Virus record (IMG/VR): IMGVR_UViG_3300035698_022190
Coordinates: 124,001-188,000 of that record
Length of the DNA stretch: 64,000 nucleotides
Reading direction: 5' to 3' (one strand)
In this document: piece by piece, positions 30,551 to 58,304 of the stretch
How the letters are laid out: each line of letters starts with the position of its first letter
How positions within the stretch are numbered: the first letter of the stretch is position 1
Notes under the pieces: model-generated
The model's database searches: none
The model's input: the letters and a program-made list of their open reading frames with translations, nothing else
Told to the model about the DNA's origin: nothing
Made by a program: the position numbers and the translations under genes

Positions 30551-30759
30551 CTTTCTTCTTCTTCCTTATATGTAGTAAGTGTAAGTTATACTTACGTTGA
30601 CTTAAGCGTTTACGTAAGGGAATCAGCCCTCTACCATTACGCTTAGAATTATTATGCATAATATCTCCTTTAATTAATACTTAATATTAAGTATACTAGA
30701 TTTCTTATACCAAGAATTACCTTTGCTATTTGCCAAGGAAATGCTTATATTTAAGTGTT

Positions 30760-32646
30760 ATGAAAAAACGTAATGTATATTCTCCTTATTTAAAGGATAG
30801 TTTGGGCGCCAACATATCTCGAGTATTTAGAGCTGTTGTAGTTGCCATACCAAAAGAAGAGGGCACAAATCGTCGCACTATCAAGGTACGTGATCTGTCT
30901 TCGACTATTGGACAGCTGTCTGAAACATTTACAGCATACCCCCCAAACCCCATACCGCACTCTGATACAGGGAGTGGTTTTTACTCTGTACCTGATGTAG
31001 GAACAGAATGTGTAGTCACAGACACCCATGAAGACGGGATAGTCCAAATTTTGACATATACACCACATACGAAGACAAGTGCTTCAACCCCCCAAGGCGT
31101 TCGCCATGCTGAGAACACAGAGCCAGGGGATTTCTATTTAAAGTCAGGGGGACATATTAAAGGGGTATTGCAGCTTTCACGAGGGGGTCTTGCGAGTTTA
31201 TTCGCTGGGCATTTTGCACGCTTATCTGTGAATGGCACGGATAAACTGGTTACAATAGGAAATAAGCGGTTTAAACACTTTAGTGCTGTAGGCAGGCATC
31301 TTAATACATACCAAGAGTCAGATGATTATACCGGAGAAGATGAGTTTACTACTCACGAGGCTAGTTTTGCACGGACATTTGAACATCCGGGAAGTAGCGA
31401 TCTTGATTATGAAACTGAGATTCAACCTAAAATTATTACTACCAAGTATGTAGACAAAGCATTAGTGCGTGCCGGCGGTATACCAAACCGTAATCACGCC
31501 ACAAAGTTTTACCCACAACATACTTACCAGATTGAAACTCGTCAATCAACTGGCGAGAACCCTCAAAAGAAAGATACTATAACCATCTTACGTTTAGGAC
31601 ACCAGGCAGGCCGTAATTTAGGAGTTTATAAGTACGGTACAGATTTATTCAACCCACCGGGGACCATGGTCGAGCTAGAAAGTAAGCGGGTGACAGCGTC
31701 TTCCTCTAGTTCGATGCTCTGGAGGTATGGAAAGTTTACAAAAGATATACAAACACGAAACCCTGATTTAGCAGCAGGAGCACCAGGCACTGACACAGAT
31801 TATGTGAGTGGTGAAGTATTTCGTCATCAAGTATATGAAGGTATAACTCCGGGAGGGGGGTCCGTCTTAAACCCAATGGCAGACTCTAAGCATTATGATT
31901 TTGAATTCCCCAAAAATAAGGCTACAGAGCAACTGACTACCAGTTTCGGCACATTAACTAGTAATTTTGCGTCCGCAGATTTAAAAGGCAGTATTTGGCG
32001 TAAGCATATTCATAGATATGATACCCCACTCACTGCAGCACCAAAAGGTTTGTCGCGAACGGAAATCTTAGGAAGAGCCTCTGAAGAATACTTGTATTCT
32101 GATGTAATTTCACATTCACTGGGGACTACTACAGTAGATTATGAACATTATATAAAAAAAGATTTATATCAACGTATATGGACACGAGTAGCCGGGGGAA
32201 CATCTAAGCTAAAGGAACAGGTGTCCGGCACAGATGATATTACTTACACCCTTACTCGATCGGACGATGACAATAGCGAAAAAATTACCTTAGAGAAGGA
32301 TAAAGCTTTAATAAAAGTATTAACTAAGAGCACTACATATTTAGTTAAGCTGAATGAGGAGGCATTGACCATTTCTATTGAGGATGACACAGATAGTGGG
32401 TCAATAGAGCTAACATCGGGCGGAATCACCATAGACGCTGGAACTAGCCCTGCAAATATTATTAAGTTAGGCGGATCAGGTGGAGAGCAGCAATTAGTAA
32501 CGAAGTCTTGGGTAACCAATATATTTATGAAACACATGCATCCAACAGCAGCAACCGGACCACCCTCTACACCTATCCCTTTGCCAGCAATAACTATTCC
32601 AGACTCATCTAACTCACCCTATACTAAACAAACCAAGGCTGAATAA
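30760..32646 (+). CDS. Baseplate central spike-like protein (gp5/gpV-type OB fold, beta-rich C-terminus)
   Basis: N-terminal AVVVAIP...IKVRDL...GFYSVPDVGTECVV OB-fold signature and a C-terminal HxH (KHMHP) followed by a Pro-rich end. The start is placed at ATG 30760, behind a promoter. Confidence 0.6.
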   Translation: MKKRNVYSPYLKDSLGANISRVFRAVVVAIPKEEGTNRRTIKVRDLSSTIGQLSETFTAYPPNPIPHSDTGSGFYSVPDVGTECVVTDTHEDGIVQILTYTPHTKTSASTPQGVRHAENTEPGDFYLKSGGHIKGVLQLSRGGLASLFAGHFARLSVNGTDKLVTIGNKRFKHFSAVGRHLNTYQESDDYTGEDEFTTHEASFARTFEHPGSSDLDYETEIQPKIITTKYVDKALVRAGGIPNRNHATKFYPQHTYQIETRQSTGENPQKKDTITILRLGHQAGRNLGVYKYGTDLFNPPGTMVELESKRVTASSSSSMLWRYGKFTKDIQTRNPDLAAGAPGTDTDYVSGEVFRHQVYEGITPGGGSVLNPMADSKHYDFEFPKNKATEQLTTSFGTLTSNFASADLKGSIWRKHIHRYDTPLTAAPKGLSRTEILGRASEEYLYSDVISHSLGTTTVDYEHYIKKDLYQRIWTRVAGGTSKLKEQVSGTDDITYTLTRSDDDNSEKITLEKDKALIKVLTKSTTYLVKLNEEALTISIEDDTDSGSIELTSGGITIDAGTSPANIIKLGGSGGEQQLVTKSWVTNIFMKHMHPTAATGPPSTPIPLPAITIPDSSNSPYTKQTKAE

Positions 32647-32909
32647 TGCAGACAGTAACAGAAGATAAAATATTTGAGACCTTTAAGTCTTTATATGAGT
32701 CCCAAAACCATGAGGAAGAGGTAACGATATCGCACACCTTCAATGATGAGACGGGACAAATAACAGATGAGACAGAAGTTCAGGCATTTGATGTAAATGC
32801 AGATCTTGAAGCATTAGTACGCTCTATTATAAAAGCAATGCTAAGTGAAATTAGAAAGAATGGTATAGCTATGGGTGATTCAACTGCTACGAAAATTGAG
32901 GTCGGTTAA
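32646..32909 (+). CDS. Hypothetical protein in the baseplate module
   Basis: TAATG overlaps with the genes on both sides. Confidence 0.65.
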   Translation: MQTVTEDKIFETFKSLYESQNHEEEVTISHTFNDETGQITDETEVQAFDVNADLEALVRSIIKAMLSEIRKNGIAMGDSTATKIEVG

Positions 32910-33322
32910 TGAAGAGCTATATAGTCCATGGAGATAAGATTATATTTGAGCCTATGGCTGGGGCAGCAATAGTTACAGCCCCTCCTGCAGCATTTATTGT
33001 TACCAGCAACATTGGGGTAGCTATGGGTAGTAAAAAGAATTTAGCAATAGAAGATGATTTAAAAAATGTAAAGGTAAGTGCTACATATATTAGTTCTGCC
33101 TTTGTTGGGGGTACGGGATTAGTTACTTTAATTAATTGGCCCAAAGTATCTAGCAAGACGACTAAGAAAAAGAAGGGGGTACTGACACATGGAGGTAAAG
33201 GAAAGTATAAACTTAGTGTTGTAACGCCGGCTATCAATCCTTCGGGCGTGGTTGATCCAACACCTATATATAATGGGTCATTTACATCCGTTCCATCACA
33301 ATTTGTATTTACTGAGAAATAA
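32909..33322 (+). CDS. PAAR-like spike tip protein
   Basis: IVHGDKIIFEP...GAAIV...YISSAFVGGTG...KTTKKKKGVL...PAINP...DPTP resembles contractile-injection-system spike-tip proteins. It lies two genes downstream of the spike. Confidence 0.6.
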   Translation: MKSYIVHGDKIIFEPMAGAAIVTAPPAAFIVTSNIGVAMGSKKNLAIEDDLKNVKVSATYISSAFVGGTGLVTLINWPKVSSKTTKKKKGVLTHGGKGKYKLSVVTPAINPSGVVDPTPIYNGSFTSVPSQFVFTEK

Positions 33323-33417
33323 CTTGACTAAAAGGTCAAACAAGGATATATTTAGGTATAATGAAACAATTAACATCATATAACACGAGCACACGTTCAT
33401 AAGGCTGGGAGACGCAA

Positions 33418-37068: not shown

Positions 37069-37575
37069 CTATAGAAATTCCATTTTTGTTTGTACTGATT
37101 TGAAACGGTTCCCCAGTACTTGTGCTAGCCATATTCTATTACTGAAGAATTGGTATTCATTATAAACAATATAATCCACATCTATATTTCCAAGACGTTG
37201 CGCAGCCTCTACAAACATACCAGCAACTTCAAAAATATCATCTGTAGGGATGGCTGCCCCTGTAACATATTGTCCAATTAGTAGTACACGATCACCGGGT
37301 TGGTGCATATCTTCTACAATGCGGCGTATCTCGGGCACGCAACAGCTGTCCAGATGGAAGTTACCCAGGGTACCACATTCAACTCCCTTTCCCATTTTTC
37401 GAGCAACAAGAGTGGCTACAGTATCTTCGGCGAAATCCGGCTCAGTAAAACGTCTGTGTAAAAAATGACGCACAGCCTTTTCTGGCGTAAGTGAAGTTTC
37501 TCCCTCAAAGGAAGCTAGTAATGGCACATTTAGATCTAAAGCTTGTACAAATCCATGTAATTCTTGAGGATTCAT
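37069..37575 (-). CDS. Hypothetical protein
   Basis: 168-aa ORF with an AAGGAG RBS and an upstream GGTATAAGAA motif. Confidence 0.7.
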   Translation of the reverse strand: MNPQELHGFVQALDLNVPLLASFEGETSLTPEKAVRHFLHRRFTEPDFAEDTVATLVARKMGKGVECGTLGNFHLDSCCVPEIRRIVEDMHQPGDRVLLIGQYVTGAAIPTDDIFEVAGMFVEAAQRLGNIDVDYIVYNEYQFFSNRIWLAQVLGNRFKSVQTKMEFL

Positions 37576-37697
37576 TTTTTGTCTCCTTTTATTTAGTTAG
37601 TAAATTAAGTTACTGTTCTTATACCTAATTTTTTTAAGATTTTGAAGTTGCCCTTTTGATTTTTTTACCTTATATTTAAACATAACCATAAAATTAT

Positions 37698-39050: not shown

Positions 39051-39087
39051 TAGTTGCTATTCTGGGTTTTTTTAGTTATATTTAAAC

Positions 39088-39696
39088 ATGAGTTATATAC
39101 TACCAAAACACGAATCCATCTTTATTCATATTCCGAAAACAGGTGGAGGAGCAATCAAAAGATGGCTTGCATCGGAACTTCCGGGTATCCAAGTGCAAAA
39201 CCATGATACACCAGAATCACTGGTACGGTATCAAAAAGTAAGTAGAGATCTCGTTGCAGAATATTGGACGTGGGGAGTAATAAGAGACCCTTGGGCACGA
39301 TTTGTTTCAGCCTGGACCTCTCGAAGTAGCACCCCAAATTTGGAGAGATATAAAAGAGGAGACACTTTTGAAGAACATCTTCTTAGTTGTTATGAAACTC
39401 CTATGGACGAACTAATTCGGTTCGACATAATCCTAAAACCACAAATTGACTATATACGTTCTTTAGAGGATTCAAGCCTAGATATGGACTTTCTTATCAA
39501 TCATGAGAATTTTACAAAAGGTTTGAAAAAGGTAACCGATCACTTAGACATACCATTTCCAGTATTACCGAAATATAATGTTTCCGCCGATCCGGATAAA
39601 CACTTTAGTACATATTACACCCCTGAAACCAGAGACATGATTGCAGAGATGTATGCTGAAGATATAGAATACGGAAAGTATACTTTCGAAATTTAA
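39088..39696 (+). CDS. Sulfotransferase family 2 protein
   Basis: PAPS-binding motifs FIHIPKTGG and RDPWARFVS, and a C-terminal YAEDIEYGKY. Confidence 0.92.
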   Translation: MSYILPKHESIFIHIPKTGGGAIKRWLASELPGIQVQNHDTPESLVRYQKVSRDLVAEYWTWGVIRDPWARFVSAWTSRSSTPNLERYKRGDTFEEHLLSCYETPMDELIRFDIILKPQIDYIRSLEDSSLDMDFLINHENFTKGLKKVTDHLDIPFPVLPKYNVSADPDKHFSTYYTPETRDMIAEMYAEDIEYGKYTFEI

Positions 39697-39734
39697 AATA
39701 AAAAAAGGGAACTAATACTTCCCTTTTTTCTTCT

Positions 39735-40355
39735 ATGCCTTTTATAATGCCAAAACAAAAAGCAATCTTTCACCACATACCAAAGACAGGTGGAACTAGT
39801 ATTCGTGCATACCTAGAAAATTATACCCATGGCAAAGATGTATATCGTCACAGACCCCCGAGCAAATGTATAGAAGATGGGCGTATCCATCCAAAATGGT
39901 TTTTCGAATCTTTTAAATTTGCCTTTGTCAGAAACCCATTTGCGCGGGCCGTATCAGTCTGGGAATTTCGAGGACGAACGGATATTAAACGTCGGCACAA
40001 CTGCGCAACTTTTGAGGAATTTATAAAATACTATTACCCACATATGCCACTACAAGATTGGGATCCAGTAGAAGCAACTATGTGCCCACAACATCATTTT
40101 GTGATTAATAAAAAAGATTCTCGCCTAAGTATGGATTTTGTGGGATATTATGAAAATTTACAGAAACACTTTAATAAGGTCTGTACCCGCTTGAAACTTC
40201 CTGTAGGAACTTTAGAACACCGCAATAAAGCCTGGTCTTTAAAAAAGTATCCCCATTACAGTACCTATTACACTACAGAACTAAAACAAATGGTTACGGA
40301 AATGTACGAAGAAGATCTAGATACTTTTAAGTACACCTTTGAAAATTTAAGTTAA
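39735..40355 (+). CDS. Sulfotransferase family 2 protein (tandem paralog)
   Basis: FHHIPKTGGTS, RNPFARAVS and YEEDLDTFKY. Confidence 0.92.
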   Translation: MPFIMPKQKAIFHHIPKTGGTSIRAYLENYTHGKDVYRHRPPSKCIEDGRIHPKWFFESFKFAFVRNPFARAVSVWEFRGRTDIKRRHNCATFEEFIKYYYPHMPLQDWDPVEATMCPQHHFVINKKDSRLSMDFVGYYENLQKHFNKVCTRLKLPVGTLEHRNKAWSLKKYPHYSTYYTTELKQMVTEMYEEDLDTFKYTFENLS

Positions 40356-40801
40356 AAGAAGGGTTAACCCTTCTTTATATTTTACCTACCATTGTTCGTG
40401 AGCGTGCTCTTCTGCGTAACGCATTAGTTCTTCATCAGGCCATTTGTCCATTTGTGAAAAGCGTTGCTCTTTTAATCTTTTAAGCTCTTGCTCCTCTAAA
40501 ATAACTTCAAGCGCATCTCGGGTTGACATACTATGGCTAAGTATGTGTAGGTCTTCATAAACTTTGGGATAGCTATAATCAATATTAGCATTCAATATGT
40601 GGATAGCATGTGTATCGCTAAACAATTGAGGCCCATAATTTATGAGTAGCAAGGTAAGGAAAAGGCTGCCTATAAAAGCAACCCCAAAATGTTTTCCCTT
40701 TATCGATTTGTCCATAAGTTTTAATCTCCTTTAATTATATTTCTTATACCTTTTTCGGTATTAAAACTTGCTTTTAATACCTTTAAACGCTATATTTAAG
40801 T

Positions 40802-41464
40802 ATGATAAATAAAAAATTTCGAGAAAATTACTTTCAGAATATAAACACTCAGAACAAGGGCTATCATCTTGGCTGGATGTATGCAGATGGAAATGTAGCA
40901 GCAACGAGTAATCAAATAGGTTTTACTATAAACCCTAAAGATATAGAACAAGTTGAAAAATTTAAGGCTGATATGGCTATTTCAAATAATCCAACTTTTC
41001 ATCGTAAAGATGACAAATATGATATGGTAAGTTTTCATTTTAGTAGTAAAATTATGCGTGGAGATTTAATTAAATTGGGGTGTACTCCAAAGAAAAGTCT
41101 TACGCTTCAAGCACCCATAGATATGGATCCCCGACTTAGGCGGCACAATATTAGAGGTTATTTTGACGGAGATGGGTCAATAGGATATATGGGCAAGAAT
41201 AAACAGCCCCAGGTAACTTTTGTCGGTACGGAGAAAATGCTAAAATGGATTCAAAATGAATTACCGGTACCCTCACACATTTATGCTTTTACCCATGCTC
41301 ATGTAAATACACGCAGACTTGTTGTTACTAAACAGAAAGATGTTATAGATTTATATGACTATTTATATAAAGGAGAAACACGTTCTCTATCTCGAAAGAA
41401 AAGTAAGTTCGCAGAAATTAAGACCGACTTACAAGCTCGACACCGTAACAAGAAAAATTCTTAA
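40802..41464 (+). CDS. Free-standing double-motif LAGLIDADG homing endonuclease
   Basis: YHLGWMYADGNV and IRGYFDGDGSI motifs, flanked by its own promoter and terminator. Confidence 0.9.
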   Translation: MINKKFRENYFQNINTQNKGYHLGWMYADGNVAATSNQIGFTINPKDIEQVEKFKADMAISNNPTFHRKDDKYDMVSFHFSSKIMRGDLIKLGCTPKKSLTLQAPIDMDPRLRRHNIRGYFDGDGSIGYMGKNKQPQVTFVGTEKMLKWIQNELPVPSHIYAFTHAHVNTRRLVVTKQKDVIDLYDYLYKGETRSLSRKKSKFAEIKTDLQARHRNKKNS

Positions 41465-41605
41465 TATAAAAAGAGGCTTTAATCGGCCTCTTTTTTTTGT
41501 CTTTTCAATGAAGACATGCATTGTCCACCCAAGTTATAACTGCTGCAAAGATTAAAATTAATACACCAATTATGTAGGGCCTACGTTTTGGAATCGACCA
41601 AAGTT

Positions 41606-42531: not shown

Positions 42532-42656
42532 GTGTTTCCTTTTTTTTTAATTAGATTATCATACAATTCTTATACCTCAAAAACACCTTCAAAACTTAAG
42601 CTAAAAAAGTGCTTAAGTAAACTTAAGCTAAAAGAAGACCGAAGTCTTCTTTGTGT

Positions 42657-42941
42657 TTACGGAGCTATATTCCTATTTAGCTCAGGCAAATCCCTGATAT
42701 GAATCTTTTGATACATTTTTTTAAGCTCTGCGCGCTTAACGGGAGCAGTGCCGACCCAGGGATGACTGGTTAAGTGCCAATGCTGACAATACTTGCACCA
42801 GTAGTAAAATAAGAAATGTGTATGTAGTTCACCGTTTCTTGTTTGATAAAAAATGGCGTCCTTTGCATCTTTTCTATTTCTATACTTTACTTTTGTGCAA
42901 GTGTCAGTTATTTTTTTAGGAATATAATTTTTTGTAATCAT
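42657..42941 (-). CDS. YxCxxCxxWHLTS zinc-ribbon phage protein (paralog 1)
   Basis: YYWCKYCQHWHLTS motif. Confidence 0.75.
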   Translation of the reverse strand: MITKNYIPKKITDTCTKVKYRNRKDAKDAIFYQTRNGELHTHFLFYYWCKYCQHWHLTSHPWVGTAPVKRAELKKMYQKIHIRDLPELNRNIAP

Positions 42942-43513: not shown

Positions 43514-43994
43514 GTTAACTCCTTATTTAGTTATTCTTCTTATACCTAAAAACCTCCCCAAAAGCTTCTCAAAACCTATTAATTTTTAAGCTAAAAAGCT
43601 CTTATTAAAAAACTAGCAGGGTAGCTTATACTTCCTACCCTGCTCTCGGTTTGAATAAACATGAAAATTTTATTTTTAAAATGAGCAGGGCGGATATTGT
43701 GGTCTACCCTGCTCGGTAACTAGTAAAAAACATTTTTGTTTTTCTTAGCTTCGTTAGTTGTCCTAGTAGTGAATTAACTGTATGACAGTTCTAGCTAGCC
43801 CCCGTGTAAACAAAACTGTTTTTTCGTCGTTAAATTTTATCTGCGTCTTCCGCCACGTCCGTTGCCATGCCCGTCTTTACGATTTGGCTTGTCGTCGCCT
43901 TTTTTACCAGTGCGTGGATTATCTCCACAGTCGCCTTTTTTAGGCGTTTCTTTTTTGTCTGCCATGTTTATAGCGTCCTTTTTTTATTGATTGA

Positions 43995-44266: not shown

Positions 44267-47200
44267 TTACATTAAACTAATACCTTCTGACATCTTTAAT
44301 TCAACAATGAGTGCAATGGCTACAGCCATTTGACAAATTAAAGCTATTGCCAAAAGCATCATAACTACCTTCCAATATTCACCGTCCCATTGATCCCACA
44401 TTACAAACCCCAGCGCAAGCAAAACAGCAACTAGGGCAATTACTGATATTATTGCCATTTAAAATTCCTTCCCGTCGCTTTCGATCCAGCGTTGATTGCT
44501 CACAGCAGCATGCCGAACTATAGCTTCCTGAGCTTCTTCACGGGTATTATAACGCACTTCATCAACAGCGTTATTAGTATATTTAACTAATACCTTAAAA
44601 GTACCGTTGCCGAATTCATGTATGCTATACCCGTTGACGCTACAGTATGATGGTCGCTTTTTACTACCTTCGTTAACCGGGCCTTTTAAAATCCTGTGTA
44701 CAGGATCATTTACAGGATCATTTACAGTATCCTTTACAATATTATTGGGTTTATTAAATCGTCCGCTGTTGCCCTCGAAACCAGTAGGTGGTCCATAAAA
44801 CAACATTGTTAGTCCCATTATTGCAAGCATTACAATAATCACTGTGCTTGTTTTCATATAGTTTTTCCTTTCTGTAGTATGCCATGTTTTTTAGCTAGGT
44901 TTAAAGCTTCGCCTGGACGAAACCGGGCCAACCGACTAACTCTGCCTAACAAATTTCGATTCAAATCATATTCATAGACCCTTCCATCGATTGAAAACTT
45001 AACGGCATCTAGACCTAAATTGTGTTTTGCGGTGCCTATTAATACTATCTTAGTCATAAGGCCTCCTTGTTATTTTGTCAGTTCTGAAATAGCGCGTTCA
45101 TGACGTAAACGTGCGATCCCCCGCTCTTTTGGTGTAAGCTTCCAATTAGTCATGCGTTTTTTATTGTCACGCATTTGCTTCATTAACCGTGCAATTTTTT
45201 CCCTAGTCATGTCTGTCCACCATTTCCAACTTTACATTACTTAAAACTCTGTTTGTATCTTCCCCATCAACTAACACACAAACGCTAAAGTATCCATCGC
45301 CTTTGTCCCGATAAACATTTCGGACCAAAGCTTCTTTCCCAATTAATCCGGTGCGTTCTGTATTGTTGGAAACATCTTTTTCTTCCAGTACTAAGAGAAT
45401 AGCCTTATCATTTCTTTTCATGACTAGTCTGTTAAAACTGCAACGAGTATTATACAAAGTATAATTAGCATTATCAATTGCATATTTGCTCCTTTTGCTT
45501 TTAATTAAAGTTTCACATGTTTCTTATACCTAAAAACTCTTTAAATCAACACAATTTTTAAGCTAAAAAAAAGGACCGACTAGCGATCCTTTTTTAAACT
45601 AAAATTAATTAGTAGCGGCTATCTACACCACAAAGCCTGTTGAACTCGGCAATAACAATTTTCTTGCCGGCGAATTCGCGTGCTTCTTCTAGGTAACCTT
45701 CAACGATTGGAATATGGGAAAGCATATCTCTTGAAAGAGGTATCGTTGTATAATTCAATGCACCCTTAATATTGAGGGTAGGTAGCTCTTCAATTTCTTT
45801 TGCAGCATACCAGCTTTCGATATCACGGGTTGACAGCTCACCACTGGAAATTCTCAGTGCGTCTGATAATACGGTGTTTTCACCTTCGTCTAGGTGTCCG
45901 AGGTAAGTCTTACCACTTACTTCGACTATAATAAGATTTTTTTTGGCCATCTTATATATCCTTTTATTTTATTGTTTTAGAATGTTTGTTTTCTAGGCGG
46001 TCTTTTGCTACCGGGCCTAGTTGGTCTTTGTTTGATGTCTCCTGCGAAGCGTATAGTATCGCGTGGCGCAATTTTCATGTCAAGTAGATGATCAATGTCT
46101 TTTTTGCAATAAGCTTCCATAGATTCCATGGCAGCTCTACTTGGGCTTGGTGGATAGGGCATTCCGTCCGGATCCATTTCAAATCCACCAGCATGCTTTT
46201 GTAAAAGTTCGAAAGAATTTTCGCCAATAAAGCCGCCGTATTCGCCTGATTTAGAGTTTCCTATTTTAGGGGTTACTTTGTATCCGGGCTGTGAATGTCC
46301 CCCGAATCCTCCATTGTACTCACCGCGACATACAATCCTAACTTGAACATTAAAGTCCCTGCTAGCAATGCCTGAGCCACCATGCATACCCCTTACAATA
46401 TCTCCTACTTCAAACTCATAATCCAAATCGGGCTCATTGTTACGGCCTATAGAACGTATGTGCTCTTCGGATACGTAGAAACTATCATCATCATCATCTT
46501 CCCGTACTCCGTTTGAATCGCATGCATAACAAAGGTATTCGTCGTCTCCGTCTTTTTCTTCATTAATAATAACGAAATCGCCCTCATAATATATCTGATC
46601 ATCATGTTCCTCAATGACCTCACAAACATCTCCAATATCAAATTTATCCATATGGTTTTATCCTTAATTTAGATATTAAATAGATACTTTCCTTATACCC
46701 TAAAATTTAAAATTTAGTATAGGATACCTTAGACATTTTAAGATCCCGTCTAAGCTAAAAAACGGGCCAACTTCGACCCGTTTAATAATGATATCCCTAA
46801 TGTAAGGGGAATGGCGATACAACAATTTCTGGTTCTAAATAAACTAACCGTGGGTTACTCTCGGCATCAAGCATCATCAACCAAGTTGCACTAGAGCTCG
46901 TTGGCATGAAGAGCCCATTAGGATCGGCCTGTGGTAGTATTTCAAAACCACCCTGGTAAGATCTTTTGGTTCTCATAGGGTTTGTGAACTGCGCGGAGAA
47001 AGGAACGCCATATCCTAGGCATTTACCAATATACATAAGTTTTCCCTGGTAATCGCTTTTGATATAAGCATAGCAAACTATATCTTCTTGATCTTGTAAT
47101 TCATAGATCATTTTCATTAGTTTACGTTGCTGGAAATTTACAATATTTGGCATCCCAATCTGACGTTGAGATTCGGCAAGTAATAATTCTGTTGCCTCTT

Positions 47201-48412: not shown

Positions 48413-48431
48413 TGACGTAAGCGCCTGTTAA

Positions 48432-48999: not shown

Positions 49000-50700
49000 C
49001 TATTTTCTAATCATTGCAAAATATACTTTTATTTCATGTTGAAATATTTCAATTTTTGTAACAACATGGCCTTTATTTTTTATGTTAGCTAAAGCTCCAA
49101 CATCTTCCCAGCTCAGTGCTTTGGAATAATCTCCATTAGTATTAAAGAGATTTGTCTTACAAATTACTTCACCAAGTTTGGCAGTTTTAGCAATTTCAAT
49201 TTCGTCCAGGCTCGTCCATTTTCCTTGAAAATATAGCCCAAATAGGCCACATAGAATGGCAACACCCATGCCCCACCAAAGTACTGCAGGAAGCGGAGTA
49301 AAAGAATTTTCTACATGTGTCCAAACATATAAGATTATTCCAGTTGCTATGGCCACCATCGTTCCAATAAAGATATATTCATATTTTTTATATTGCTTTA
49401 TAGTCATTTTTATTCCTTTTTTGTTATACCATTCTTATCCCAATTTTTAAGTTAAAAAAAAGGGAGCGAGGCCCCCTTTAATTTATTGTTCTTCTTTGGC
49501 TGCAGCTATTATTTCTTCCCTGTTTTCCCACATGATTGGTGCCCAGGTTAAAGTATATCTACAAAAAGTTCTTACAAATTTGTCGATACAGTTCCATCTT
49601 GTTTGTTCAATTCCACATTTTACCATTTCTCTGCGCACTATGGATCTCATGGATTTTTCGGATTGAAGCAACAATATCCAACCTAAGAGGACGTAAAGTA
49701 TTACTATTGATAACAATATGTGTATTATCATTTTAATTTCCTTTCTATTAAGTATTCTTCTTATACCCAATCTTAACGTAAAAGAGAGCATCACTGCTCT
49801 CTTTAATTTGTAAATATCTCACCAATATTTACAGAGTTCCCCATAATAACAAACAAAGACTATATATAACTATATAGCTTTACATAATTCTTATACCTAA
49901 TTGCGGTTAAAAGTGTCTAATGAAAATAAAAGAAATATACAATAATAAAACTCAGGAGGGCGCATACCAAACATGGTAGAAGATGGGTGTATATAAATTT
50001 ACGTCGGTCCCCAGTTCGGCGGCCGAAGTGTAAGTCAATGAACTTACATAAATAGTTCTTCATAATTTAATATACACTTTAAATAAAATAAAAGCAAGTT
50101 TAAACGTTCTTAAACTAAAAGAAGAGTTTAACCTCTTCCTTTAAGATACATCTTCTAAAGTACTGGTGCATTACAATCTGGGCAGTGTTTCTTTGTCAAG
50201 CCCAGTCCAGATAGCCCATTCAAAAACTTATGTGTTTTTTCATGTTTTACCGTAATGGGCTGCCATGCGGTCGTACATAGCGTGCAAAAGAAAGCGTTTG
50301 CTCCCCTGTTAGTTTTTCTTGTACTCGATTTATTTTGTAAAATAGCCTTTGATGTGTTTTTCATACTTATAAGAAATTGACAAATTGTATTATTTGTGTC
50401 TACATTTTGTGGAAAGTGTTTTGCTTGTAAAGCCATGTTATCTCCTGTTTGTTATTTATGGGCAATTTGCTGTCCCGGACTTAGTTTTAATTGGGAAAGC
50501 TTTTCTTGTAACTTAATAAATTCTACATCTGTGAGATGGATATCTATCTCTCGATCAGCGGTAAGAACTGATAAAACAATGGCCGATCCTGTTACTTTGC
50601 AAACTTCTCGGCTGGTATTAATCTTTATTTTGTCAGCACAAATCAGTTCTTCTTTTCTTGTAATGACAGCACTTGGGGATTTTTTCTTGGACATAGGCAT
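49000..50700 (-). CDS. Hypothetical proteins 49000-49407, 49483-49731, 50155-50436, 50452-50700
   Basis: Mostly preceded by a GG(T/G)ATAAG motif and followed by a hairpin. Confidence 0.6.
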
Positions 50701-50809
50701 GCTCCTTTTAGGTTAATTTAAATGACTAGTTATAATTCTTATACCATTTATATTTTAAGAAAAAATAAAGAAAAGTTGCTTTTAAAGGTATTGTATGCTA
50801 TATTTAGGT

Positions 50810-51001
50810 ATGAAACCATCAGAAAAAATTTATAACGATTTGATTCGAGAGTGGAATGCCTTTGAATTAGATTACGAAAAATACTTAGAATTTGGTAACC
50901 AAGCAGCAGCACGACGTGCACGACTCTCTTTAATCAGGCTGAGAAAATTGGTGACCCCTTTTCGTTTAATAAGTGTAGCTGAATCACAAAAAAAGGGTTA
51001 G
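50810..51001 (+). CDS. Hc1-like small basic (histone H1-like) protein
   Basis: GNQAAARRARLSL...KLVTPFRLISV resembles the GNKAAGTRARK family. Apparently leaderless ATG at 50810. Confidence 0.65.
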   Translation: MKPSEKIYNDLIREWNAFELDYEKYLEFGNQAAARRARLSLIRLRKLVTPFRLISVAESQKKG

Positions 51002-51002
51002 A

Positions 51003-52841: not shown

Positions 52842-52942
52842 CCGTCAGTTTTTTTTAATTTAAAAACAGGGAATGTTGGTTCCCTGTTTTTTTATGCCCG
52901 AAACCACTTGACTTTCTGCAAGTAAAAACGTTATATTTAGAT

Positions 52943-53152
52943 ATGACTAAAGCACAGAAAATATTTTTTAAGTATGCCCAAACAGCACCTTTAAAAACCA
53001 TAATTAAGGCAACTACAAAAGTTGTACAAAAAGGTGTAGGGACTGTTCCCCCAAAAGGAATTAAGAGTGTTGGTTTTAAAGGAAAACACTTGCCCAATAA
53101 AAATGCTTTTGAAGGGGCAGATAAAATTGGAAAAGGCGCTCCACGCCCCTAA
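52943..53152 (+). CDS. Small basic protein, first gene of the recoded block
   Basis: Apparently leaderless start 5 nt after TATATT, with the sequence FFKYAQ. Confidence 0.65.
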   Translation: MTKAQKIFFKYAQTAPLKTIIKATTKVVQKGVGTVPPKGIKSVGFKGKHLPNKNAFEGADKIGKGAPRP

Positions 53153-53154
53153 GT

Positions 53155-54510
53155 ATGTCGTCTAAAGCCAAAGGCATTCCCGATAGATCTAAGTATCTAC
53201 AAATGCCGGTTACTAAGAATAATGAGTGGCTTGGCAATATTCAGTCCCACAAGGCAAACAAGGCAGGGCAACATTTTGATTTACGTATAAATGATCCAAA
53301 AACTTCGCATGCATATTCTTGAGCACTTCGTAGTTTACCAGAACCTGGACAAAAGGTATTAGCCGTTGAACAGCCCACTCATACAAAATCTTATATGGGG
53401 TGGTCTGGTATAATAGAATCCGGCTACGGGGCAGGGACAGTAGAAAGTACTTTTCATGATAAAATAGAAGTGCTAGAATCTGGCACAGATAGAGTCACCT
53501 TTAATATGTATGGACCGGGACAAAAAGTACATCGTTATATGCTTATGCGGATGGATAACAAAGATTGGCTACTTTATAACTATACTGCTACAACAGACAC
53601 ACCATTAATACCAAAACATAAACGTTCTTATAAAGAAATATCATATGATAAAGTTGAAACTAATAGAGATAATGAGTGGATGGCGCCCAAGATGGACGGT
53701 GCCCACAATACAGTTCTTCTTAGACCTGAAAAACGCATTGACGTATATTCTCATAGGCTAAGTAAAAAAGGCTCAGAAAGAATTGATCATTCATATAGAA
53801 CAGATTTATATAAAACGAAAAGTCCTAAGGAATTAGGAGTAACGGTAGTTCGTTCTGAATTATATTTACCAAAACAAGATAGTTCTATAGTAGGAAGTTT
53901 GTTGACTCCTACTGTTTGGAAATCAAGACTAAAGCAAAGAACTCTTGGTAAATTACAAAATGTTATTTTTGATGTGGATCGTTATAAAGGACAAGACATG
54001 ACTGACGCGCCATACAGTGAAAAATGGCGAATATTGCAAAAAATTAATAAACTTATTCCTGCGCTACATTTACCCGAACTGGCTAAAACTCCAGAGCAAA
54101 AAAAAGCTATGTTAAGATCGGTTCGTGATAATACCCATTCAGAAACAGGCGAAGGTATTGTTATTTATAAACTTAACAAATCTATTCCTATCAAAGCAAA
54201 AGCTGTAAGTGACTACGATGTAAAAATAACCGGAACTTATCCAGCACTTCCTGGATCAAAATATGATGGAAAAGCTGTTGGAGGTTTCACGGCTACCCCA
54301 GAGTATGACAGCAATGTTGAGATTAGAGTGGGTACTGGCTTAAAAGATGTAGAACGAATGGAAGTTTATAAGCATCCTGAAAAATATATAGGCCAATGGG
54401 CTAAAGTCCAGGGACTAAAAAAAACGAAATCGGGCAAGATTAGAATGCCCGTATATAAAGGACTTCGTTTTGAAAAATATCTTGGCAAATTTTTTAACCA
54501 AAAAACATAA
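53155..54510 (+). CDS. LigD-type 3'-phosphoesterase domain fused to an ATP-dependent ligase (451 aa; TGA at 53320 read as Trp)
   Basis: Reads HKANKAGQHFDLRI...AYS[TGA]ALR...LAVEQPTH...GYGAGTV, matching the LigD PE pattern HxDLRL...SWA...LAV...GYGAG. The ligase part has APKMDG, EGIVIY and RMPVY. Confidence 0.88.
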
Positions 54511-54962
54511 TGGAAAACATAGCAAACTACTTTTATTCTGAAATGCTTGCAAATATGATATCACAAGCACGATATACTGTTAAAAGCTTAAAAAAACAGA
54601 ACTATTTATATTCCCCATCTTCGGCGGCGTGGGAGTATCAAACTATTCACTTTGGAGGGATGCGCGGATCTGGCCATAACACAGCTATGGAAGCCTTGTC
54701 CCATGTTTTTAAATGTGAAATTGTTTGCGCAATCGCCGCACATACCAAGCTTTTTCCTGAGGCAAAAAAAGGTACGTCAATTACTTGGCTTGACCATGTG
54801 CTACAGCCGGGAACTCATAGACATAAATTTGAAGTAGTGTTTCTAGATAACTGGGCCACCATGATGTTACAGGCATACCCAGATGTGGAAAGCATGATTC
54901 ACCAACTAGAGCCCATATATAGAGCATACACAAATAGCACTATTTTTGTATTAATACACTAG
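54510..54962 (+). CDS. Hypothetical protein
   Basis: TAATG overlap with the ligase gene. Ends in TAG. Confidence 0.6.
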   Translation: MENIANYFYSEMLANMISQARYTVKSLKKQNYLYSPSSAAWEYQTIHFGGMRGSGHNTAMEALSHVFKCEIVCAIAAHTKLFPEAKKGTSITWLDHVLQPGTHRHKFEVVFLDNWATMMLQAYPDVESMIHQLEPIYRAYTNSTIFVLIH

Positions 54963-54981
54963 AGGATGAAATAAAAAATAT

Positions 54982-57144
54982 ATGAGTTTTAATTTAAATA
55001 AAGTTGAGTATAAAGACCATTTAAAAGGGTTTTGAGCGGGCAATTTAATAGCTAATTGGAAAGCGTTGCCGAGCGAGTTCAAGAAATTTGAGCCACCATT
55101 TTTTACCACAAAGGATGATATACTGTTTCCCTATAACTGGCAAGTGAACTGGAAAGCTGACGACGACAATGATATTGAGTATATGTATTTACACTTAATG
55201 AATAAACATAAAACATTGCAGCTGTCAGCAAATCAAATTCGAGATGGATGATTAGAACATATAAACGATGATTATTTGTGGGTTGCCAATCAGCGTGCTT
55301 ATGATTTAATGAAAACAGGCATGGTTCCCCCAAGCACAGGAATGGCGTGTAATAATGAGTTTTCTGACAAGATTGATGCCCAAATAGAGTGTGAAATCTT
55401 TGGTGTATTTTATCCCGATGAGCCACACAAGGCATTAAATATAGCAGATTTGCCAATTAGAACAGTTGGCGAAGGTATTGCTTATCACGCCTCAAGAGTT
55501 TATGTGGCGATGTATTCTTTAGCTTTAAACAGTCAATCGCCATTAGAGTTGTTAGATAAAGCAATCCAATATGGGAATGATAAAACAAGTGAGATTTATA
55601 ATTCAATAAGAGTAAGTTTCAAAAATAGTTATACTTGGGAAGAAGCGAGAGATTTCTTTTATGAAGAATATCAAAAGAACAACTCTGACTACGATTGGGC
55701 GTTAGATGCTGAGATTAATTTTGGTGCTGTTCTAATTGCTCTGTTATGGGGTGAAATGGATTACAAAAAGACTGTGATGATTGGTACTCTTGCAGGATGG
55801 GATTCAGATTGTAATGCAGTTACAGCAGGGTCATTGGTTGGATATGTAAAAGGATTCAAACATCTTGAACAGGTTTTTGGTAGAAAGATTTATACTAATT
55901 ATAATATAGCAAGAACTCGTAAGAATATGCCTGATTATTTACCTAATGTAAGTGGCGCTGAAGATACTTTTGAGTTCATGGCAGATAGAATGATTAATTT
56001 TATGACAATAGATAATGGAGATAAAATGAAAAAAGTAATATTTTGTATTGGAGACAGTAGAACTGCTGCAGGACACAGTCCTTGGTACACACCAGCTCCC
56101 GATAGTTATCCTTTTTTCTTACAGCAAGAAATGGGGAATGGGTATGATGTTAGACAGTGGGGACAAGGTGGCACTTCTGTAACTAAGGGAGTCCATTGGA
56201 GTATCTGGGATGGTTTTGAAGGTAACCCGGCTTTGTCTTTTCAGCATTTAAAAAATGTTCAGCAAATAGAGAGTTTCTGGGATAAAGCTTTTCCTGGAAT
56301 GCCTTTTAATGAAACTGAGATAATTAACATCGTCAATTATGGTACTAATGATGCGATGAATAATAGATGGCCTACAACTAAAGCGAACTTTAAAAGGGAT
56401 TACAAAGCATTAACTTGGCTACTAAAAGGTAAAACATACCTTTGTTTACCACAGCCAACTTTTGGTACAGGTGAAGACCATGTTTATAACTCGTCAATTT
56501 TAGAAGTGCACGCATTAATAAATGAGCTTTCCAAAGAAACAGGATGCCCCACAATAGACTTTTATACAGGTACAACAGCTAGTATGTCGCCTGTTGATGG
56601 GCTACATTTCGGAGCATTAGGCAATATGCACTTTGCTAATGCAGCAAGTAAAGAATTAAAAAATGACTCACCAATAATACCACCAATAATCGGAGAACCT
56701 ATGGAAACACCAATAATTAAAATTGAAAATAATAAACTATCCGTAACTAATTTTGATCCAACTGTTACAAATTATAGCTGGCAGTATAGTAAAACATTGC
56801 ATGGTTATGATGAATGGCTTGGTTTTGGAACAGAAATGGACATTAAGCCGAGATTCCAAATAGATGGACATTATTTCTTTTGTTACGCAAGAGATAATAC
56901 CACTGATGGTAGAACACCTGATTCTAAGAGGGTGATATATAAATCAGGCGCCCCGGCCCCAATATGCGGATGCACAGATTCGGAAGCAACAAATTATAAT
57001 CCAAACGCCACAGAAGATGACGGCACATGCATATACTCTAACCCCACCAATAATGATAAAGTTGTTTTAGAGATGCGAGCACATCTTTTAACTGCTACAA
57101 ATGCATTAACTGCCATTGAAGACTTATTTGATGATATTGAGTAA
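54982..57144 (+). CDS. ADP-ribosylglycohydrolase-like domain + SGNH/GDSL hydrolase + C-terminal GCTD-NYNP repeat motif (720 aa; TGA at 55033 and 55249 read as Trp)
   Basis: LKGF[TGA]AGNLIANW, DDDNDIEY, IRDG[TGA]LEH, IDAQIECEIFG and GWDSDCN (ARH family). IGDSRTA, GQGG, NYGTND and DGLHF (SGNH). CGCTDSEATNYNPNATEDDGTC. Confidence 0.85.
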
Positions 57145-57157
57145 AATTTAAGGAGAC

Positions 57158-57433
57158 ATGATGAAAAAAATAGCTAATAGATTTGTGCCCTCAAGAGATT
57201 TCGTTAAGCTTTGAAACAGGCGTAGTCGTATTGCAGCACAGCTCACAAAACAGGTAGCTGAAATAGCAACTAAACGAGTAGCACCTGGACCAGAGCCATT
57301 GGGAAAATTTATGAAAGCAATAAAAGTTCCAAGCCAACGAATCACAAAAGTTGATCAAGATATTTCTAAAGTCCAGTCAATAATAAATAAAAAAAGATAT
57401 TCAAAATTATACAAACAGTATCATGGAGCTTAA
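57158..57433 (+). CDS. Basic hypothetical protein (91 aa; TGA at 57212 read through)
   Basis: AAGGAG RBS and an open frame to TAA except for one TGA. Its end overlaps the next gene. Confidence 0.7.
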
Positions 57434-57794
57434 ATTAAAATATATTTTCACTACCGAGACAGATCGTCAAGAGGGGCTTATGCAGAAGGCCCCTCTTGCA
57501 CAGAACGAAGGTGCTTTATTTATCTGGCAAAAGCCCGTTGTAAATTATGTTTGGAATAAGAACGTATCCTTTCCAATAGATGTCGGATTTTTTTCTGAAT
57601 CACACTCTCTTATTAATATAGAGCATTTAAGAGCTTATCAAGAAAGTCCAGTATATTCAGTTGGGCGCTATCAATTTATCTTAGAAACCCCTCATAGTTG
57701 GTTTATTAAACACAAAATAAAAGTGTTTACCAACTTAATTAAACTTTTAGACCCTATACCCAAAGAATTATCTTGACAAACTGCTAAAAATTAA
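57423..57794 (+). CDS. DUF192 family protein
   Basis: RQEGLM, GALFIW, WNKNVSFPIDVGF and ILETPHSWF. Ends at TGA 57776, or at TAA 57794 if read through. Confidence 0.85.
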
Positions 57795-57806
57795 CTATCT
57801 TAAAGT

Positions 57807-58304
57807 ATGTTAAATCCTGCGACTGATAAGACACAACCTTCCGAATATACGAAGGCCCTCAAACTAAAAAATAAACTTGATATTGCTATACGCAATAAAG
57901 AGCTCCAAAACATTTCTCATAATGTTCGAGCAATGGTTGATGGAAAAGAAAGTAACAAATCTTTTGCTAAGAGTGTTAGCAAACATACCGCCACAGGTGC
58001 TGTAGTAGGCGCTGCCGCTGGTGGGGTTGCCTCTGTTCCCCTATCTTTAATATCAAAAGGTTTTAGAGGTTTAAGACATAAGCCCATTGGCATGGCTACA
58101 GTGGCTGCCTCAACTGCAATCGGTGCAGTTGCGCTTGGCGGAAATCGCCTTAGACAGGGAAAACGTCCAATTCAAATTAGACAACACGACGCAGATTTAA
58201 TGCATTTAAAAGGCTTAAGACAAGAATTAAAAAACACAGAATCACCTGCTTATACAGCATATGTTAAACATAACAGAAAGTTGAGCAGGACTGTGGATGT
58301 TTAA
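57807..58304 (+). CDS. Basic protein with Gly/Ala-rich hydrophobic segments (putative internal virion protein)
   Basis: ATGAVVGAAAGGVASV and MATVAASTAIGAVALGG. Confidence 0.65.
   Translation: MLNPATDKTQPSEYTKALKLKNKLDIAIRNKELQNISHNVRAMVDGKESNKSFAKSVSKHTATGAVVGAAAGGVASVPLSLISKGFRGLRHKPIGMATVAASTAIGAVALGGNRLRQGKRPIQIRQHDADLMHLKGLRQELKNTESPAYTAYVKHNRKLSRTVDV

What the first reader, a model, noticed from the sequence alone, without database searches (positions are those of the whole stretch)
30723..57809. Plus-strand promoters appear to make leaderless mRNAs, while minus-strand genes use Shine-Dalgarno sites
In five of eight TTG..-17/18-TAT(A/C)TT promoters the ATG begins exactly 5 nt after the -10 hexamer (39088, 40802, 50810, 52943, 57807), which puts the expected start site at the ATG. 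Most other plus-strand starts also lack an SD (exceptions 57158 and 61377), whereas many minus-strand genes have AAGGA(G). Transcription signals, initiation mode and stop-codon meaning therefore all divide by strand. Inference: two expression programmes, the second possibly running on phage-modified translation machinery.
Basis: partly seen in the sequence, partly recalled or inferred. Interest (0 to 1): 0.6.

Follow-up and report, generated by a model that had tools for sequence, protein, structure and literature searches.

The report
Promoters that abut start codons
A 210-kb salt-lake phage has a family of strong promoters, half of which sit so close to the start codon that the messenger RNA can have no leader; this goes with the promoter type, not with the DNA strand, and is a known kind of phage gene expression.

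Summary
The core observation is real. All eight plus-strand promoters are there, and five have ATG exactly 5 nt after TATATT. Across the genome, TTGNNN-N17-TATATT occurs 29 times, 9 with ATG at +5 (P=1e-9).

The arrangement marks a promoter class, not a strand. Class A is aaaacTTGAC(T/A)-N17-TATATT-tAAGT, with about 27 copies on both strands. Thirteen copies abut a start codon, 8 on plus and 5 on minus, including window 29364 and 50063. One orthologous gene keeps this promoter-to-ATG geometry in five other phage lineages.

A second class, GGTATAAGAA (class B), has 24 intergenic copies. All are on the minus strand, none abuts a start codon, and 13 lead to SD-led ORFs.

The SD difference holds only locally. 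It is 15% vs 47% in the window but 23% vs 30% genome-wide (p=0.25).

TGA meaning does split by strand: Trp in plus-strand genes (127 in-frame), stop in minus-strand genes (30).

Outside the window the phage encodes an RpoD-like sigma, a fused RNA polymerase beta/beta', ribosomal protein bS21, 25 standard tRNAs, a tRNA(UCA) and a tmRNA.

No RNA data exist, so the start sites are inferred. I rate it a new member of known kinds: leaderless phage transcripts and a stop-codon-recoded phage.

The parts
30723..30751 (+). Class A promoter (TTGCTA-17-TATATT). ATG of the 628-aa gene follows at 30760, 8 nt after the -10, so the leader would be at most 2 nt.
33324..33352 (+). Class A promoter (TTGACT-17-TATATT) with a 65-nt leader to the 726-aa gene at 33418, which has a GGGAG SD.
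37648..37676 (+). Class A promoter (TTGCCC-17-TATATT). The methyltransferase-domain gene starts at 37698, 21 nt after the -10, with no SD.
39054..39090 (+). Class A promoter plus abutting ATG at 39088. The gene 39088-39696 encodes a sulfotransferase; the Pfam match starts at residue 4.
40768..40804 (+). Class A promoter plus abutting ATG at 40802. The gene 40802-41464 encodes a LAGLIDADG-like (homing-type) endonuclease; the PHROG match starts at residue 2.
50776..50812 (+). Class A promoter plus abutting ATG at 50810. The gene 50810-51001 encodes a 63-aa histone-H1-like Hc1 protein; the Pfam match covers residues 7-60 of 63.
52908..52945 (+). Class A promoter (spacer 18) plus abutting ATG at 52943. 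The 69-aa basic protein gene (52943-53152) is followed by a DNA ligase gene with an in-frame TGA.
57773..57809 (+). Class A promoter (TTGACA-17-TATCTT) plus abutting ATG at 57807. The gene 57807-58304 (165 aa) has no family match.
50061..50097 (-). Class A promoter on the MINUS strand (TTGCTT-17-TATATT) plus abutting ATG at 50063. The ORF is 49917-50063 (48 aa).
29362..29375 (-). Class A -10 element (TATATT-taggt-ATG) with no TTG -35, on the MINUS strand, abutting the RNase HII gene 28726-29364. The Pfam match starts at residue 4.
50736..50745 (-). Class B promoter GGTATAAGAA, divergent from the class A promoter at 50776. An AAGGAG-led ORF follows.
49888..49897 (-). Class B promoter GGTATAAGAA.
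49758..49767 (-). Class B promoter GGTATAAGAA; an SD-led ORF follows.
45521..45530 (-). Class B promoter GGTATAAGAA; AAAGGAG then ATG lie downstream.
43537..43546 (-). Class B promoter GGTATAAGAA. A 25-nt leader with TAAGGAG precedes the 147-aa gene.
42567..42576 (-). Class B promoter GGTATAAGAA; an SD-led 132-aa gene follows.
40741..40750 (-). Class B promoter GGTATAAGAA, back to back with the class A promoter at 40768. An AAGGAG-led ORF follows.
37616..37625 (-). Class B promoter GGTATAAGAA, back to back with the class A promoter at 37648. The AAGGAG-led 168-aa gene 37069-37575 follows.
30702..30711 (-). Class B promoter GGTATAAGAA, back to back with the class A promoter at 30723.
26755..29738 (-). 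Four more class B promoters (26755-26764, 28442-28451, 28709-28718, 29729-29738) in ORF-poor stretches.
53155..64000 (+). Plus-strand genes with in-frame TGA read as Trp, for example 58757-61408 with 8 TGA codons.

Best explanation
The window belongs to a 210-kb tailed phage from salt-lake and marine metagenomes. The phage uses two conserved promoter classes.

Class A is a near-consensus sigma-70-type promoter, aaaacTTGAC(T/A)-17 bp-TATATT-tAAGT. It nearly always has a purine, usually A preceded by T, as the sixth base after the -10 hexamer. I infer that this purine is the transcription start.

In 13 of about 27 class A promoters that A is the A of the start codon. The promoter-proximal gene would then be made from a leaderless mRNA, read by ribosomes that bind a 5'-terminal AUG without a Shine-Dalgarno site. 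Downstream genes in the same units use weak or moderate SDs, or stop/start coupling.

Class B (T-rich, then GGTATAAGAA, with no -35) lies only on the minus strand. It heads short units of small genes with 15-45-nt leaders and strong TAAGGAG sites.

TGA usage tracks the classes. Class B units end genes with TGA. Class A units avoid TGA stops and, on the plus strand, read TGA as Trp. This fits an early programme (B, standard code) followed by a middle/late programme (A, compatible with suppression).

Shown here:
- the motifs, their exact spacing and their statistics;
- that the abutted ATGs are genuine start codons;
- conservation of the geometry in relatives;
- the split in TGA usage.

Inferred:
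- the start-site position;
- which polymerase or sigma reads which class (I favour the phage RpoD-like sigma for class A);
- the timing of the two programmes.
For: Motif and spacing:
- Searches give P=1e-9 and a spike only at offset 5.
- PWM hits scoring 18 or more are all intergenic and point at genes. Markov-simulated sequence mostly tops out at 15-18, once at 19.5.

The ATGs are real starts:
- Family alignments begin at residues 1-7 of the ORFs for the sulfotransferase, endonuclease, Hc1, RNase HII and PolB-like exonuclease.
- In-frame stops lie 2-10 codons upstream (29 for the 52943 gene), and no SD-led alternative start lies within 45 codons.

Conservation:
- The gene after the terminase gene keeps TTGAC(A/T)-17-TA(T/C/A)ATT-N5-ATG in four other lineages and N6 in a fifth.
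- These orthologues share only 27-69% protein identity, and where a pairwise alignment was made it runs from residue 6 of both proteins.

Promoter class:
- Start codons abut 13/27 class A vs 0/24 class B promoters (p=5e-5). There is no strand effect within class A.
- Class B is 24/24 on the minus strand. It is conserved and equally one-stranded in relative G001.

TGA:
- 127 in-frame TGAs are evenly spread in plus-strand genes and align to W in 22 of 35 cases.
- 30 of 33 minus-strand TGAs are terminal stops.
- TGA stops number 2/121 under class A vs 25/145 under class B (p=1e-5).

Phage sigma:
- It has regions 2 and 4, and its region 4.2 motif TRERVRQ matches that of principal sigmas.

Precedent:
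- Thermus phages YS40 and Lalka27a have mapped leaderless transcripts (bioRxiv 10.64898/2026.04.20.719267).
- Deinococcus has -10 elements adjacent to ORFs (PMC12340547).
Against: - No RNA run holds this phage, so no 5' end is mapped.
- In E. coli the commonest start lies 7 nt after the -10 (my own knowledge). Here that is the T of ATG, and the G at 8 is also a favourable purine. A start there would lose the AUG.
- The exonuclease orthologue in G001 is not promoter-abutted, and G001 has only 2-3 such sites, so the arrangement turns over.
- Several abutted ORFs are short (48-69 aa) and have no homologues.
- The host is unknown, so its ability to translate leaderless mRNA is unknown.
- The sigma gene itself lies downstream of a class A promoter, which complicates a simple B-then-A cascade. 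In the distant relative Arash, sigma and RNA polymerase are found in virions (PMC10585845).
Confidence: 0.7

Rival explanations
1. The two strands are two programmes: the plus strand is leaderless, SD-free and recoded, and is translated by phage-modified ribosomes; the minus strand is SD-dependent.
For: - In the window, SD frequency differs by strand (15% vs 47%).
- TGA meaning splits by strand.
- Class B promoters are minus-only.
- A bS21 gene lies in the late plus-strand cluster next to the terminase gene.
- bS21 sits at the anti-SD and affects leaderless mRNA handling in E. coli (PMC10491246).
Against: - Five of the 13 abutted promoters are on the minus strand.
- Genome-wide SD frequency is equal between strands and reverses outside the window.
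- Many plus-strand late genes have AGGAG or GGAGG sites.
- No IF1, IF3, S1 or release factor is encoded.
- Nothing ties bS21 to these mRNAs.
Confidence: 0.12
2. The promoters are real but the mRNAs are not leaderless. Transcription starts at the G of ATG or elsewhere, or these genes are mostly translated from read-through polycistronic RNA. In that case the AU-rich TATATTTAAGT acts as an SD-independent ribosome landing site.
For: - G at position 8 after the -10 also follows a pyrimidine.
- Several abutted promoters lie inside co-directional gene runs with no terminator upstream, for example 39054 only 4 nt after the preceding stop.
- Many other genes in this phage start without an SD.
Against: - All 13 ATGs are in frame with the ORF and are the only usable start.
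- The exact 5-nt (once 6-nt) distance is kept across six lineages while the intervening bases change. A loose AU-rich element would not require that.
- The same -10 plus tAAGT-A element occurs before the tRNA array and before leaders of 20-100 nt, where it cannot be a ribosome site.
Confidence: 0.15
3. A chance juxtaposition of AT-rich hexamers and ATG in a genome of 37% G+C.
For: A generic sigma-70 scan finds no more sites than in shuffles (71 vs 75.5).
Against: - Binomial P=1e-9.
- 0 of 100 shuffles reach the observed count.
- The arrangement is conserved in relatives.
Confidence: 0.01

Closest known systems
Thermus phages phiYS40 and Lalka27a (experimentally mapped leaderless transcripts)
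   Same: Large lytic phages in which the promoter -10 sits directly before the start codon, and the first base of the initiator codon is the 5' end of the RNA (bioRxiv 10.64898/2026.04.20.719267, citing Sevostyanova 2007).
   Different: - There, most transcripts are leaderless and the host phylum itself favours leaderless mRNA.
- Here only 13 of about 51 promoters are abutted, all from one promoter class that has a full -35.
- The host here is unknown, and no start sites are mapped.
Lambda cI mRNA from PRM
   Same: A sigma-70 promoter whose start site is the A of the AUG. A resembling downstream sequence (TAGATT-taacgt-ATG; recalled from memory, not tested).
   Different: - PRM is a single regulatory case in a temperate phage with a 6-nt gap.
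- Here a whole promoter family has a 5-nt gap.
-10 region adjacent to ORFs in Deinococcus-Thermus (PMC12340547)
   Same: The same architecture. That paper shows experimentally that the -10-to-start-codon distance must be right, and that a -35 placed 17 bp upstream boosts expression.
   Different: That is a bacterial genome-wide habit. Here it is a phage promoter class in a low-GC genome.
Stop-codon-recoded phages (Borges et al., bioRxiv 10.1101/2021.08.26.457843)
   Same: - TGA aligns with Trp.
- Recoding is concentrated in structural/late genes, with early genes in the standard code.
- A suppressor-type tRNA is present.
- The model is a mid-infection code switch.
   Different: - Those phages came from gut microbiomes; this one is from salt-lake and marine samples.
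- Here the split coincides perfectly with strand, and TGA stop usage tracks a specific promoter class.
- The tRNA(UCA) here is Sec-like in shape.
Salmonella phage Arash and Vibrio phages D69/D148/D181
   Same: - Nearest cultured relatives, at about 30% identity in terminase and RNA polymerase.
- Arash also encodes RNA polymerase beta, beta' and a sigma, all detected in virions (PMC10585845).
   Different: - Very distant.
- D69 has no TTGAC-N18-TANNNT-N5-ATG site at all.
- Here beta and beta' are fused into one 2019-aa protein.
Phage-encoded bS21 (Chen et al. 2022, PMC9723584)
   Same: The bS21 gene sits among structural and packaging genes. That paper proposes that phage bS21 biases late translation initiation.
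   Different: - Those phages infect freshwater Bacteroidetes, which ignore SD sites.
- This phage has strong SDs in one module.
- This bS21 is very divergent, with no pairwise hit to any solved bS21.

Membership tests
Leaderless mRNA genes | The promoter -10 element ends 5-7 nt before the start codon, leaving no room for a 5'UTR or SD. | tested here: met
   13 sites with a gap of exactly 5 nt.
Leaderless mRNA genes | The transcript 5' end maps to the first base of the start codon. | not testable with these tools
   None of the 19 listed runs is RNA. The read-laying run returned DNA contigs only.
Leaderless mRNA genes | The abutted codon is the genuine start. | tested here: met
   Family alignments begin at residues 1-7. 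The orthologue alignment runs from residue 6 of both proteins. Upstream in-frame stops are present and no SD-led alternative start exists.
Leaderless mRNA genes | A 5'-terminal AUG is preferred over GUG or UUG. | tested here: met
   12 of 13 are ATG. The one GTG (genome 65597) may be a spurious ORF ahead of the tRNA(UCA).
Sigma-70-family -35/-10 promoters | TTGACA-like and TATAAT-like hexamers 17+/-1 bp apart, intergenic, oriented towards genes, and more frequent than chance. | tested here: met
   About 27 PWM hits score 18 or more, against Markov controls that mostly top out at 15-18, once 19.5. All are intergenic and correctly oriented.
Sigma-70-family -35/-10 promoters | A cognate sigma is available, and binding is shown. 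| tested here: inconclusive
   The phage RpoD-like sigma has regions 2 and 4, with TRERVRQ conserved. Binding and start-site choice cannot be tested. Host sigma-70 is equally possible.
Code-4 recoded phages | In-frame TGA in late/structural genes that aligns with Trp. | tested here: met
   127 in-frame TGAs are evenly spread in plus-strand genes. 22 of 35 aligned positions are W in G001.
Code-4 recoded phages | Early genes remain in the standard code. | tested here: met
   30 minus-strand genes end in TGA, many in ATGA overlaps.
Code-4 recoded phages | A TGA suppressor tRNA. | tested here: inconclusive
   ARAGORN calls a 98-nt tRNA(tca) of Sec-like shape. Rfam tRNA-Sec scores 32.5 bits, below the 47-bit gathering score. 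No TrpRS is encoded.
Phage-encoded ribosomal protein bS21 | An S21 domain scoring above the curated cut-offs. | tested here: met
   Pfam 30.3 bits vs a cut-off of 27; NCBIfam 35.6 vs 28.95.
Phage-encoded ribosomal protein bS21 | It alters initiation in favour of phage mRNAs. | not testable with these tools
   Only the gene's position (directly upstream of the terminase gene) is known.
phiYS40-type phages in which most transcripts are leaderless | The majority of transcription units are leaderless. | tested here: not met
   13 of about 51 recognised promoters and 13 of about 270 genes. No class B promoter is abutted.

The most novel reading that the evidence does not exclude
Promoter class, 5'-end architecture and codon meaning together form one temporal switch.

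- Early class B units would need SD pairing and TGA termination.
- Later class A units would be leaderless or SD-poor and free of TGA stops.
- The phage's divergent bS21, made with the late genes, would retune the anti-SD platform of host ribosomes.
- As a result, SD-dependent host and early mRNAs would be disfavoured, and 5'-AUG or SD-independent late mRNAs favoured, at the same time as TGA becomes Trp.
Probability: 0.12. Interest if true: 0.75.

Novelty: new member of a known kind. Interest (0 to 1): 0.42.

Why it matters
Leaderless phage transcription is documented mainly in hosts that favour it themselves, such as Thermus and actinobacteria. This is a clean, statistically strong and evolutionarily conserved case in an uncultured low-GC jumbo-sized phage. 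That phage also switches the meaning of TGA and carries its own sigma factor, RNA polymerase and bS21.

The practical consequences are:
- The two promoter motifs give a direct handle for annotating transcription units in this clade.
- Gene callers that demand an SD will mis-start these genes.
- The link between promoter class and TGA usage gives a sequence-only way to separate pre-switch from post-switch genes in recoded phages.

The finding does not open a new mechanism unless the bS21 link proves real.

Tried and rejected
- RNA evidence. The one run search found 19 DNA holders (salt-lake and marine) and no RNA run. Laying contigs of four runs on 37500-43400 showed near-identical strains but nothing about start sites.
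- Host identification.
  - The bS21 look-alikes in the protein atlas are viral clusters.
  - bS21 has no pairwise hit to any solved structure.
- A Bacteroidetes-type promoter (TTG / TAnnTTTG). I considered this because TATATTTA resembles it. I rejected it as unproven because the final G is absent, the -35 is TTGAC, and strong SDs exist. Leaderless mRNAs are in any case rare in Bacteroides (about 3.7%, PMC7366714).
- More orthologous loci. The ligase and RNase HII genes have no relatives in viral contigs. The metagenome record behind L115 is not held for whole-record scans.
- A generic sigma-70 scan is not enriched.
- Alternative codes. TAG and TAA recoding give no coherent gain.
- The paper PMC1885378 (phiYS40) is not held, so I cite it only through papers that cite it.

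Full report
**Context.** The window is bases 124001-188000 of a 210,208-bp IMG/VR virus record that CheckV rates as complete. G+C is about 37%. Near-identical DNA occurs in salt-lake and marine metagenomes, and no RNA run holds it. The nearest cultured relatives are very distant, at about 30% identity in terminase and RNA polymerase. They are Vibrio phages D69/D148/D181 and Salmonella phage Arash.

The genome carries 25 standard tRNAs, a tRNA(tca) and a tmRNA (Rfam scores the tmRNA at 108 bits). It also encodes:
- a 2019-aa fused RpoB-RpoC protein;
- a 270-aa RpoD-like sigma factor;
- a bS21 homologue directly upstream of the terminase gene.

**Checking the observation.** ATG begins exactly 5 nt after the -10 hexamer at 39088, 40802, 50810, 52943 and 57807.
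- In the window, TATATT-N5-ATG occurs 10 times against 1.8 expected, and no shuffle out of 100 reaches 10.
- Genome-wide, 9 of 29 TTGNNN-N17-TATATT sites have ATG at offset 5 (binomial P=1.1e-9). No other offset has more than 2.
- Requiring that the ATG opens an ORF of at least 45 aa gives 13 cases at offset 5 and 0-3 per strand at any other offset.
- A generic sigma-70 consensus scan is not enriched (71 vs 75.5 in shuffles). What stands out is a phage-specific extended motif, not AT-richness.

**The motif family (class A).** A weight matrix built from 22 sites gives the consensus aaaacTTGAC(T/A)-17-TATATT-tAAGT. About 27 hits score 18 or more. All are intergenic and point at a downstream gene. 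Markov-simulated sequence mostly tops out at 15-18, once at 19.5.

The sites lie on both strands, 17 on plus and 10 on minus. Thirteen have a start codon at exactly +5:
- Plus strand: genome 3439, 65597 (GTG), 163088, 164802, 174810, 176943, 181807 and 196155.
- Minus strand: genome 12937, 29344, 80384, 153364 and 174063.

Two of the minus-strand cases lie in the window, at 29364 (RNase HII) and 50063. One more promoter (30751) has ATG at +8.

The remaining class A promoters have leaders of 20-100 nt, or head the tRNA array (107658) or the RNA polymerase gene (83302). One sits 190 nt before the tRNA(tca). Nearly all class A sites, abutted or not, have a purine, usually A after T, as the sixth base after the -10. 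This is what a conserved start nucleotide looks like.

**Are the abutted ATGs real starts?**
- Pfam and PHROG alignments begin at residues 1-7 of these ORFs. This holds for the sulfotransferase (residue 4), the LAGLIDADG-like endonuclease (2), Hc1 (7 of 63), RNase HII (4), the PolB-like exonuclease (3) and an HNH/DUF559 endonuclease.
- In-frame stops lie 2-10 codons upstream (29 for the 52943 gene).
- No SD-preceded alternative start exists within 45 codons.

**Comparative test.** The 342-aa gene that follows the terminase gene (genome 196155) has orthologues in five other lineages, at 27-69% identity.
- Where a pairwise alignment was made, it runs from residue 6 of both proteins.
- Upstream, four of these lineages have TTGACA-17-TA(T/C/A)ATT-N5-ATG, like G000. 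One has TTGACT-17-TATATT-N6-ATG.
- The spacer bases and the 5-nt gap bases differ between lineages.

This is selection on geometry, not inherited sequence. The arrangement also turns over. The exonuclease orthologue in relative G001 is not abutted. G001 has only 2-3 such sites, and Vibrio phage D69 has none.

**A second promoter class (class B).** K-mer enrichment in upstream regions revealed GGTATAAGAA, preceded by T-rich sequence and with no -35.
- There are 24 intergenic copies, all on the minus strand.
- In the window the exact 10-mer occurs 13 times against 0.24 expected.
- None abuts a start codon.
- Thirteen are followed at 15-45 nt by a strong SD such as (A)AAGGAG and an ORF.
- Relative G001 has the same motif, again on one strand only, the strand opposite its structural genes. 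It also has the same divergent A/B promoter pair in front of its RNA polymerase gene.

At four divergence points in the window (about 30.7, 37.6, 40.75 and 50.75 kb), a class B promoter faces left and a class A promoter faces right.

**Shine-Dalgarno use.** With starts chosen by coding potential alone, an SD of at least 5 nt precedes the following fractions of genes:

| Region | Plus strand | Minus strand | p |
|---|---|---|---|
| Window | 15% | 47% | 0.005 |
| Whole genome | 23% | 30% | 0.25 |
| Outside the window | 26% | 15% | n.s. (0.11) |

Internal ATG controls give 4-5%. SD richness is therefore a property of the class B small-gene module, not of a strand. Many plus-strand genes without an SD start at or within 5 nt of the preceding stop (25 of 92).

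**Stop-codon meaning.**
- Plus-strand genes contain 127 in-frame TGAs spread evenly along their length, against 268 TGG codons.
- Minus-strand genes have 33 TGAs, of which 30 sit at the end with no coding signal beyond them, often in ATGA overlaps.
- TGA positions align with W in 22 of 35 cases in G001, and with TGA again in the close relative L028.

TGA usage also tracks promoter class. Genes whose nearest upstream promoter is class B end in TGA in 25 of 145 cases. Those under class A do so in 2 of 121 (p=1e-5), and one of those two is a TGATAA tandem stop. This matches the early-standard, late-recoded model of Borges et al. (bioRxiv 10.1101/2021.08.26.457843).

**Mechanism and who reads what.** The start position is inferred.
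- The A of ATG is the sixth base after the -10 and follows a T, which is a favourable start dinucleotide.
- In E. coli the commonest start lies at position 7 (my own knowledge). Here that is a T, and the G at 8 is a possible alternative.
- Conserved geometry and the in-frame ORFs favour the A.

The phage sigma keeps the region 4.2 motif TRERVRQ that reads TTGACA in principal sigmas. The alignment shows changes where E. coli sigma-70 has the residues that read an extended -10; I identify those residues from my own knowledge. This mildly favours the phage sigma for class A and the host holoenzyme for class B.

That assignment is inference. In Arash, beta, beta' and sigma are found in virions (PMC10585845), so other orders of events are possible.

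**Translation machinery.** bS21 is the only ribosomal or initiation protein found. IF1, IF3, S1, the RF-1 release-factor domain and TrpRS are all absent. bS21 supports the anti-SD helix, and its absence eases lambda cI leaderless mRNA handling in E. coli (PMC10491246). Phage bS21 has been proposed to bias late translation (PMC9723584). A link here is possible but untested.

**Comparison and verdict.** Leaderless phage transcripts are known from lambda cI, Thermus phages YS40 and Lalka27a, and hosts of Deinococcus-Thermus (bioRxiv 10.64898/2026.04.20.719267; PMC12340547). Recoded phages and phage bS21 are also known. This is a well-supported new member of these kinds.

It adds one useful observation: initiation architecture and TGA usage both follow promoter class. 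The strand-based formulation is only partly right.

Code 4 was used only for plus-strand genes, where the genome shows it.

Noticed in passing
window 24557-24622 (-): A tRNA-like element scores 41.6 bits against the Rfam tRNA model. It has good acceptor, D and T arms, but the anticodon arm is stunted (a 3-bp stem with a 6-nt loop). ARAGORN does not call it, and it overlaps the start of ORF 24168-24629.
   Followed up: partly
genome 65786-65883 (+), outside the window (L005:9786-9883): The only TGA-reading tRNA candidate has a long variable arm and a Sec-like shape. ARAGORN labels it 'SeC'; Rfam tRNA-Sec scores 32.5 bits, below the 47-bit gathering score. Yet TGA aligns with Trp in relatives, and no TrpRS is encoded. 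How Trp is inserted is unexplained. A class A promoter lies 190 nt upstream.
   Followed up: partly
genome 83406-89465 (+), 10611-11423 (-), 193165-193419 (+): The phage encodes a fused bacterial-type RNA polymerase beta/beta' (2019 aa, 3 in-frame TGAs), an RpoD-like sigma and a divergent bS21. In relative G001 the polymerase match is split by about 1.3 kb of inserted DNA.
   Followed up: partly
window 21778-23230, 25208-27051, 28160-28725: These are ORF-poor stretches of 0.6-1.8 kb on the minus-strand side. Class B promoters at 26755, 28442 and 28709 fire into them. They may hold non-coding RNAs or very small genes. Rfam finds nothing there at gathering score.
   Followed up: no
window 39700-39735: The second of two tandem sulfotransferase paralogues (39735-40355) starts 4 nt after a 12-bp terminator-like hairpin. 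It has no promoter and no SD, and its mode of expression is unclear.
   Followed up: no
window 40379-42506: One marine run (X2) has a contig that joins 40378 to 42507. It skips the 2.1 kb that holds the class A promoter, the abutted LAGLIDADG-like endonuclease gene and two minus-strand genes. This may be a presence/absence polymorphism of a mobile cassette. The evidence is weak: one contig, a 36-nt side, and an 85% likeness threshold.
   Followed up: no
genome 80384-80420 (-): The TGA stop of the upstream gene (80388-81521) lies inside the TTGACA -35 hexamer of the class A promoter. That promoter abuts the HNH/DUF559 endonuclease gene, which makes a very compact junction.
   Followed up: no
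genome 1-100 and 210109-210208: Both contig ends consist of the same GGAACATC-type short repeats inside an open reading frame. The record is probably a circularly closed or permuted genome that the assembler broke inside a repetitive gene.
   Followed up: no
genome 7808-36374 (-): The replication module (ribonucleotide reductase, primase, exonuclease, sigma) uses TGA neither as a stop nor as a sense codon. It is therefore readable both before and after a code switch.
   Followed up: partly
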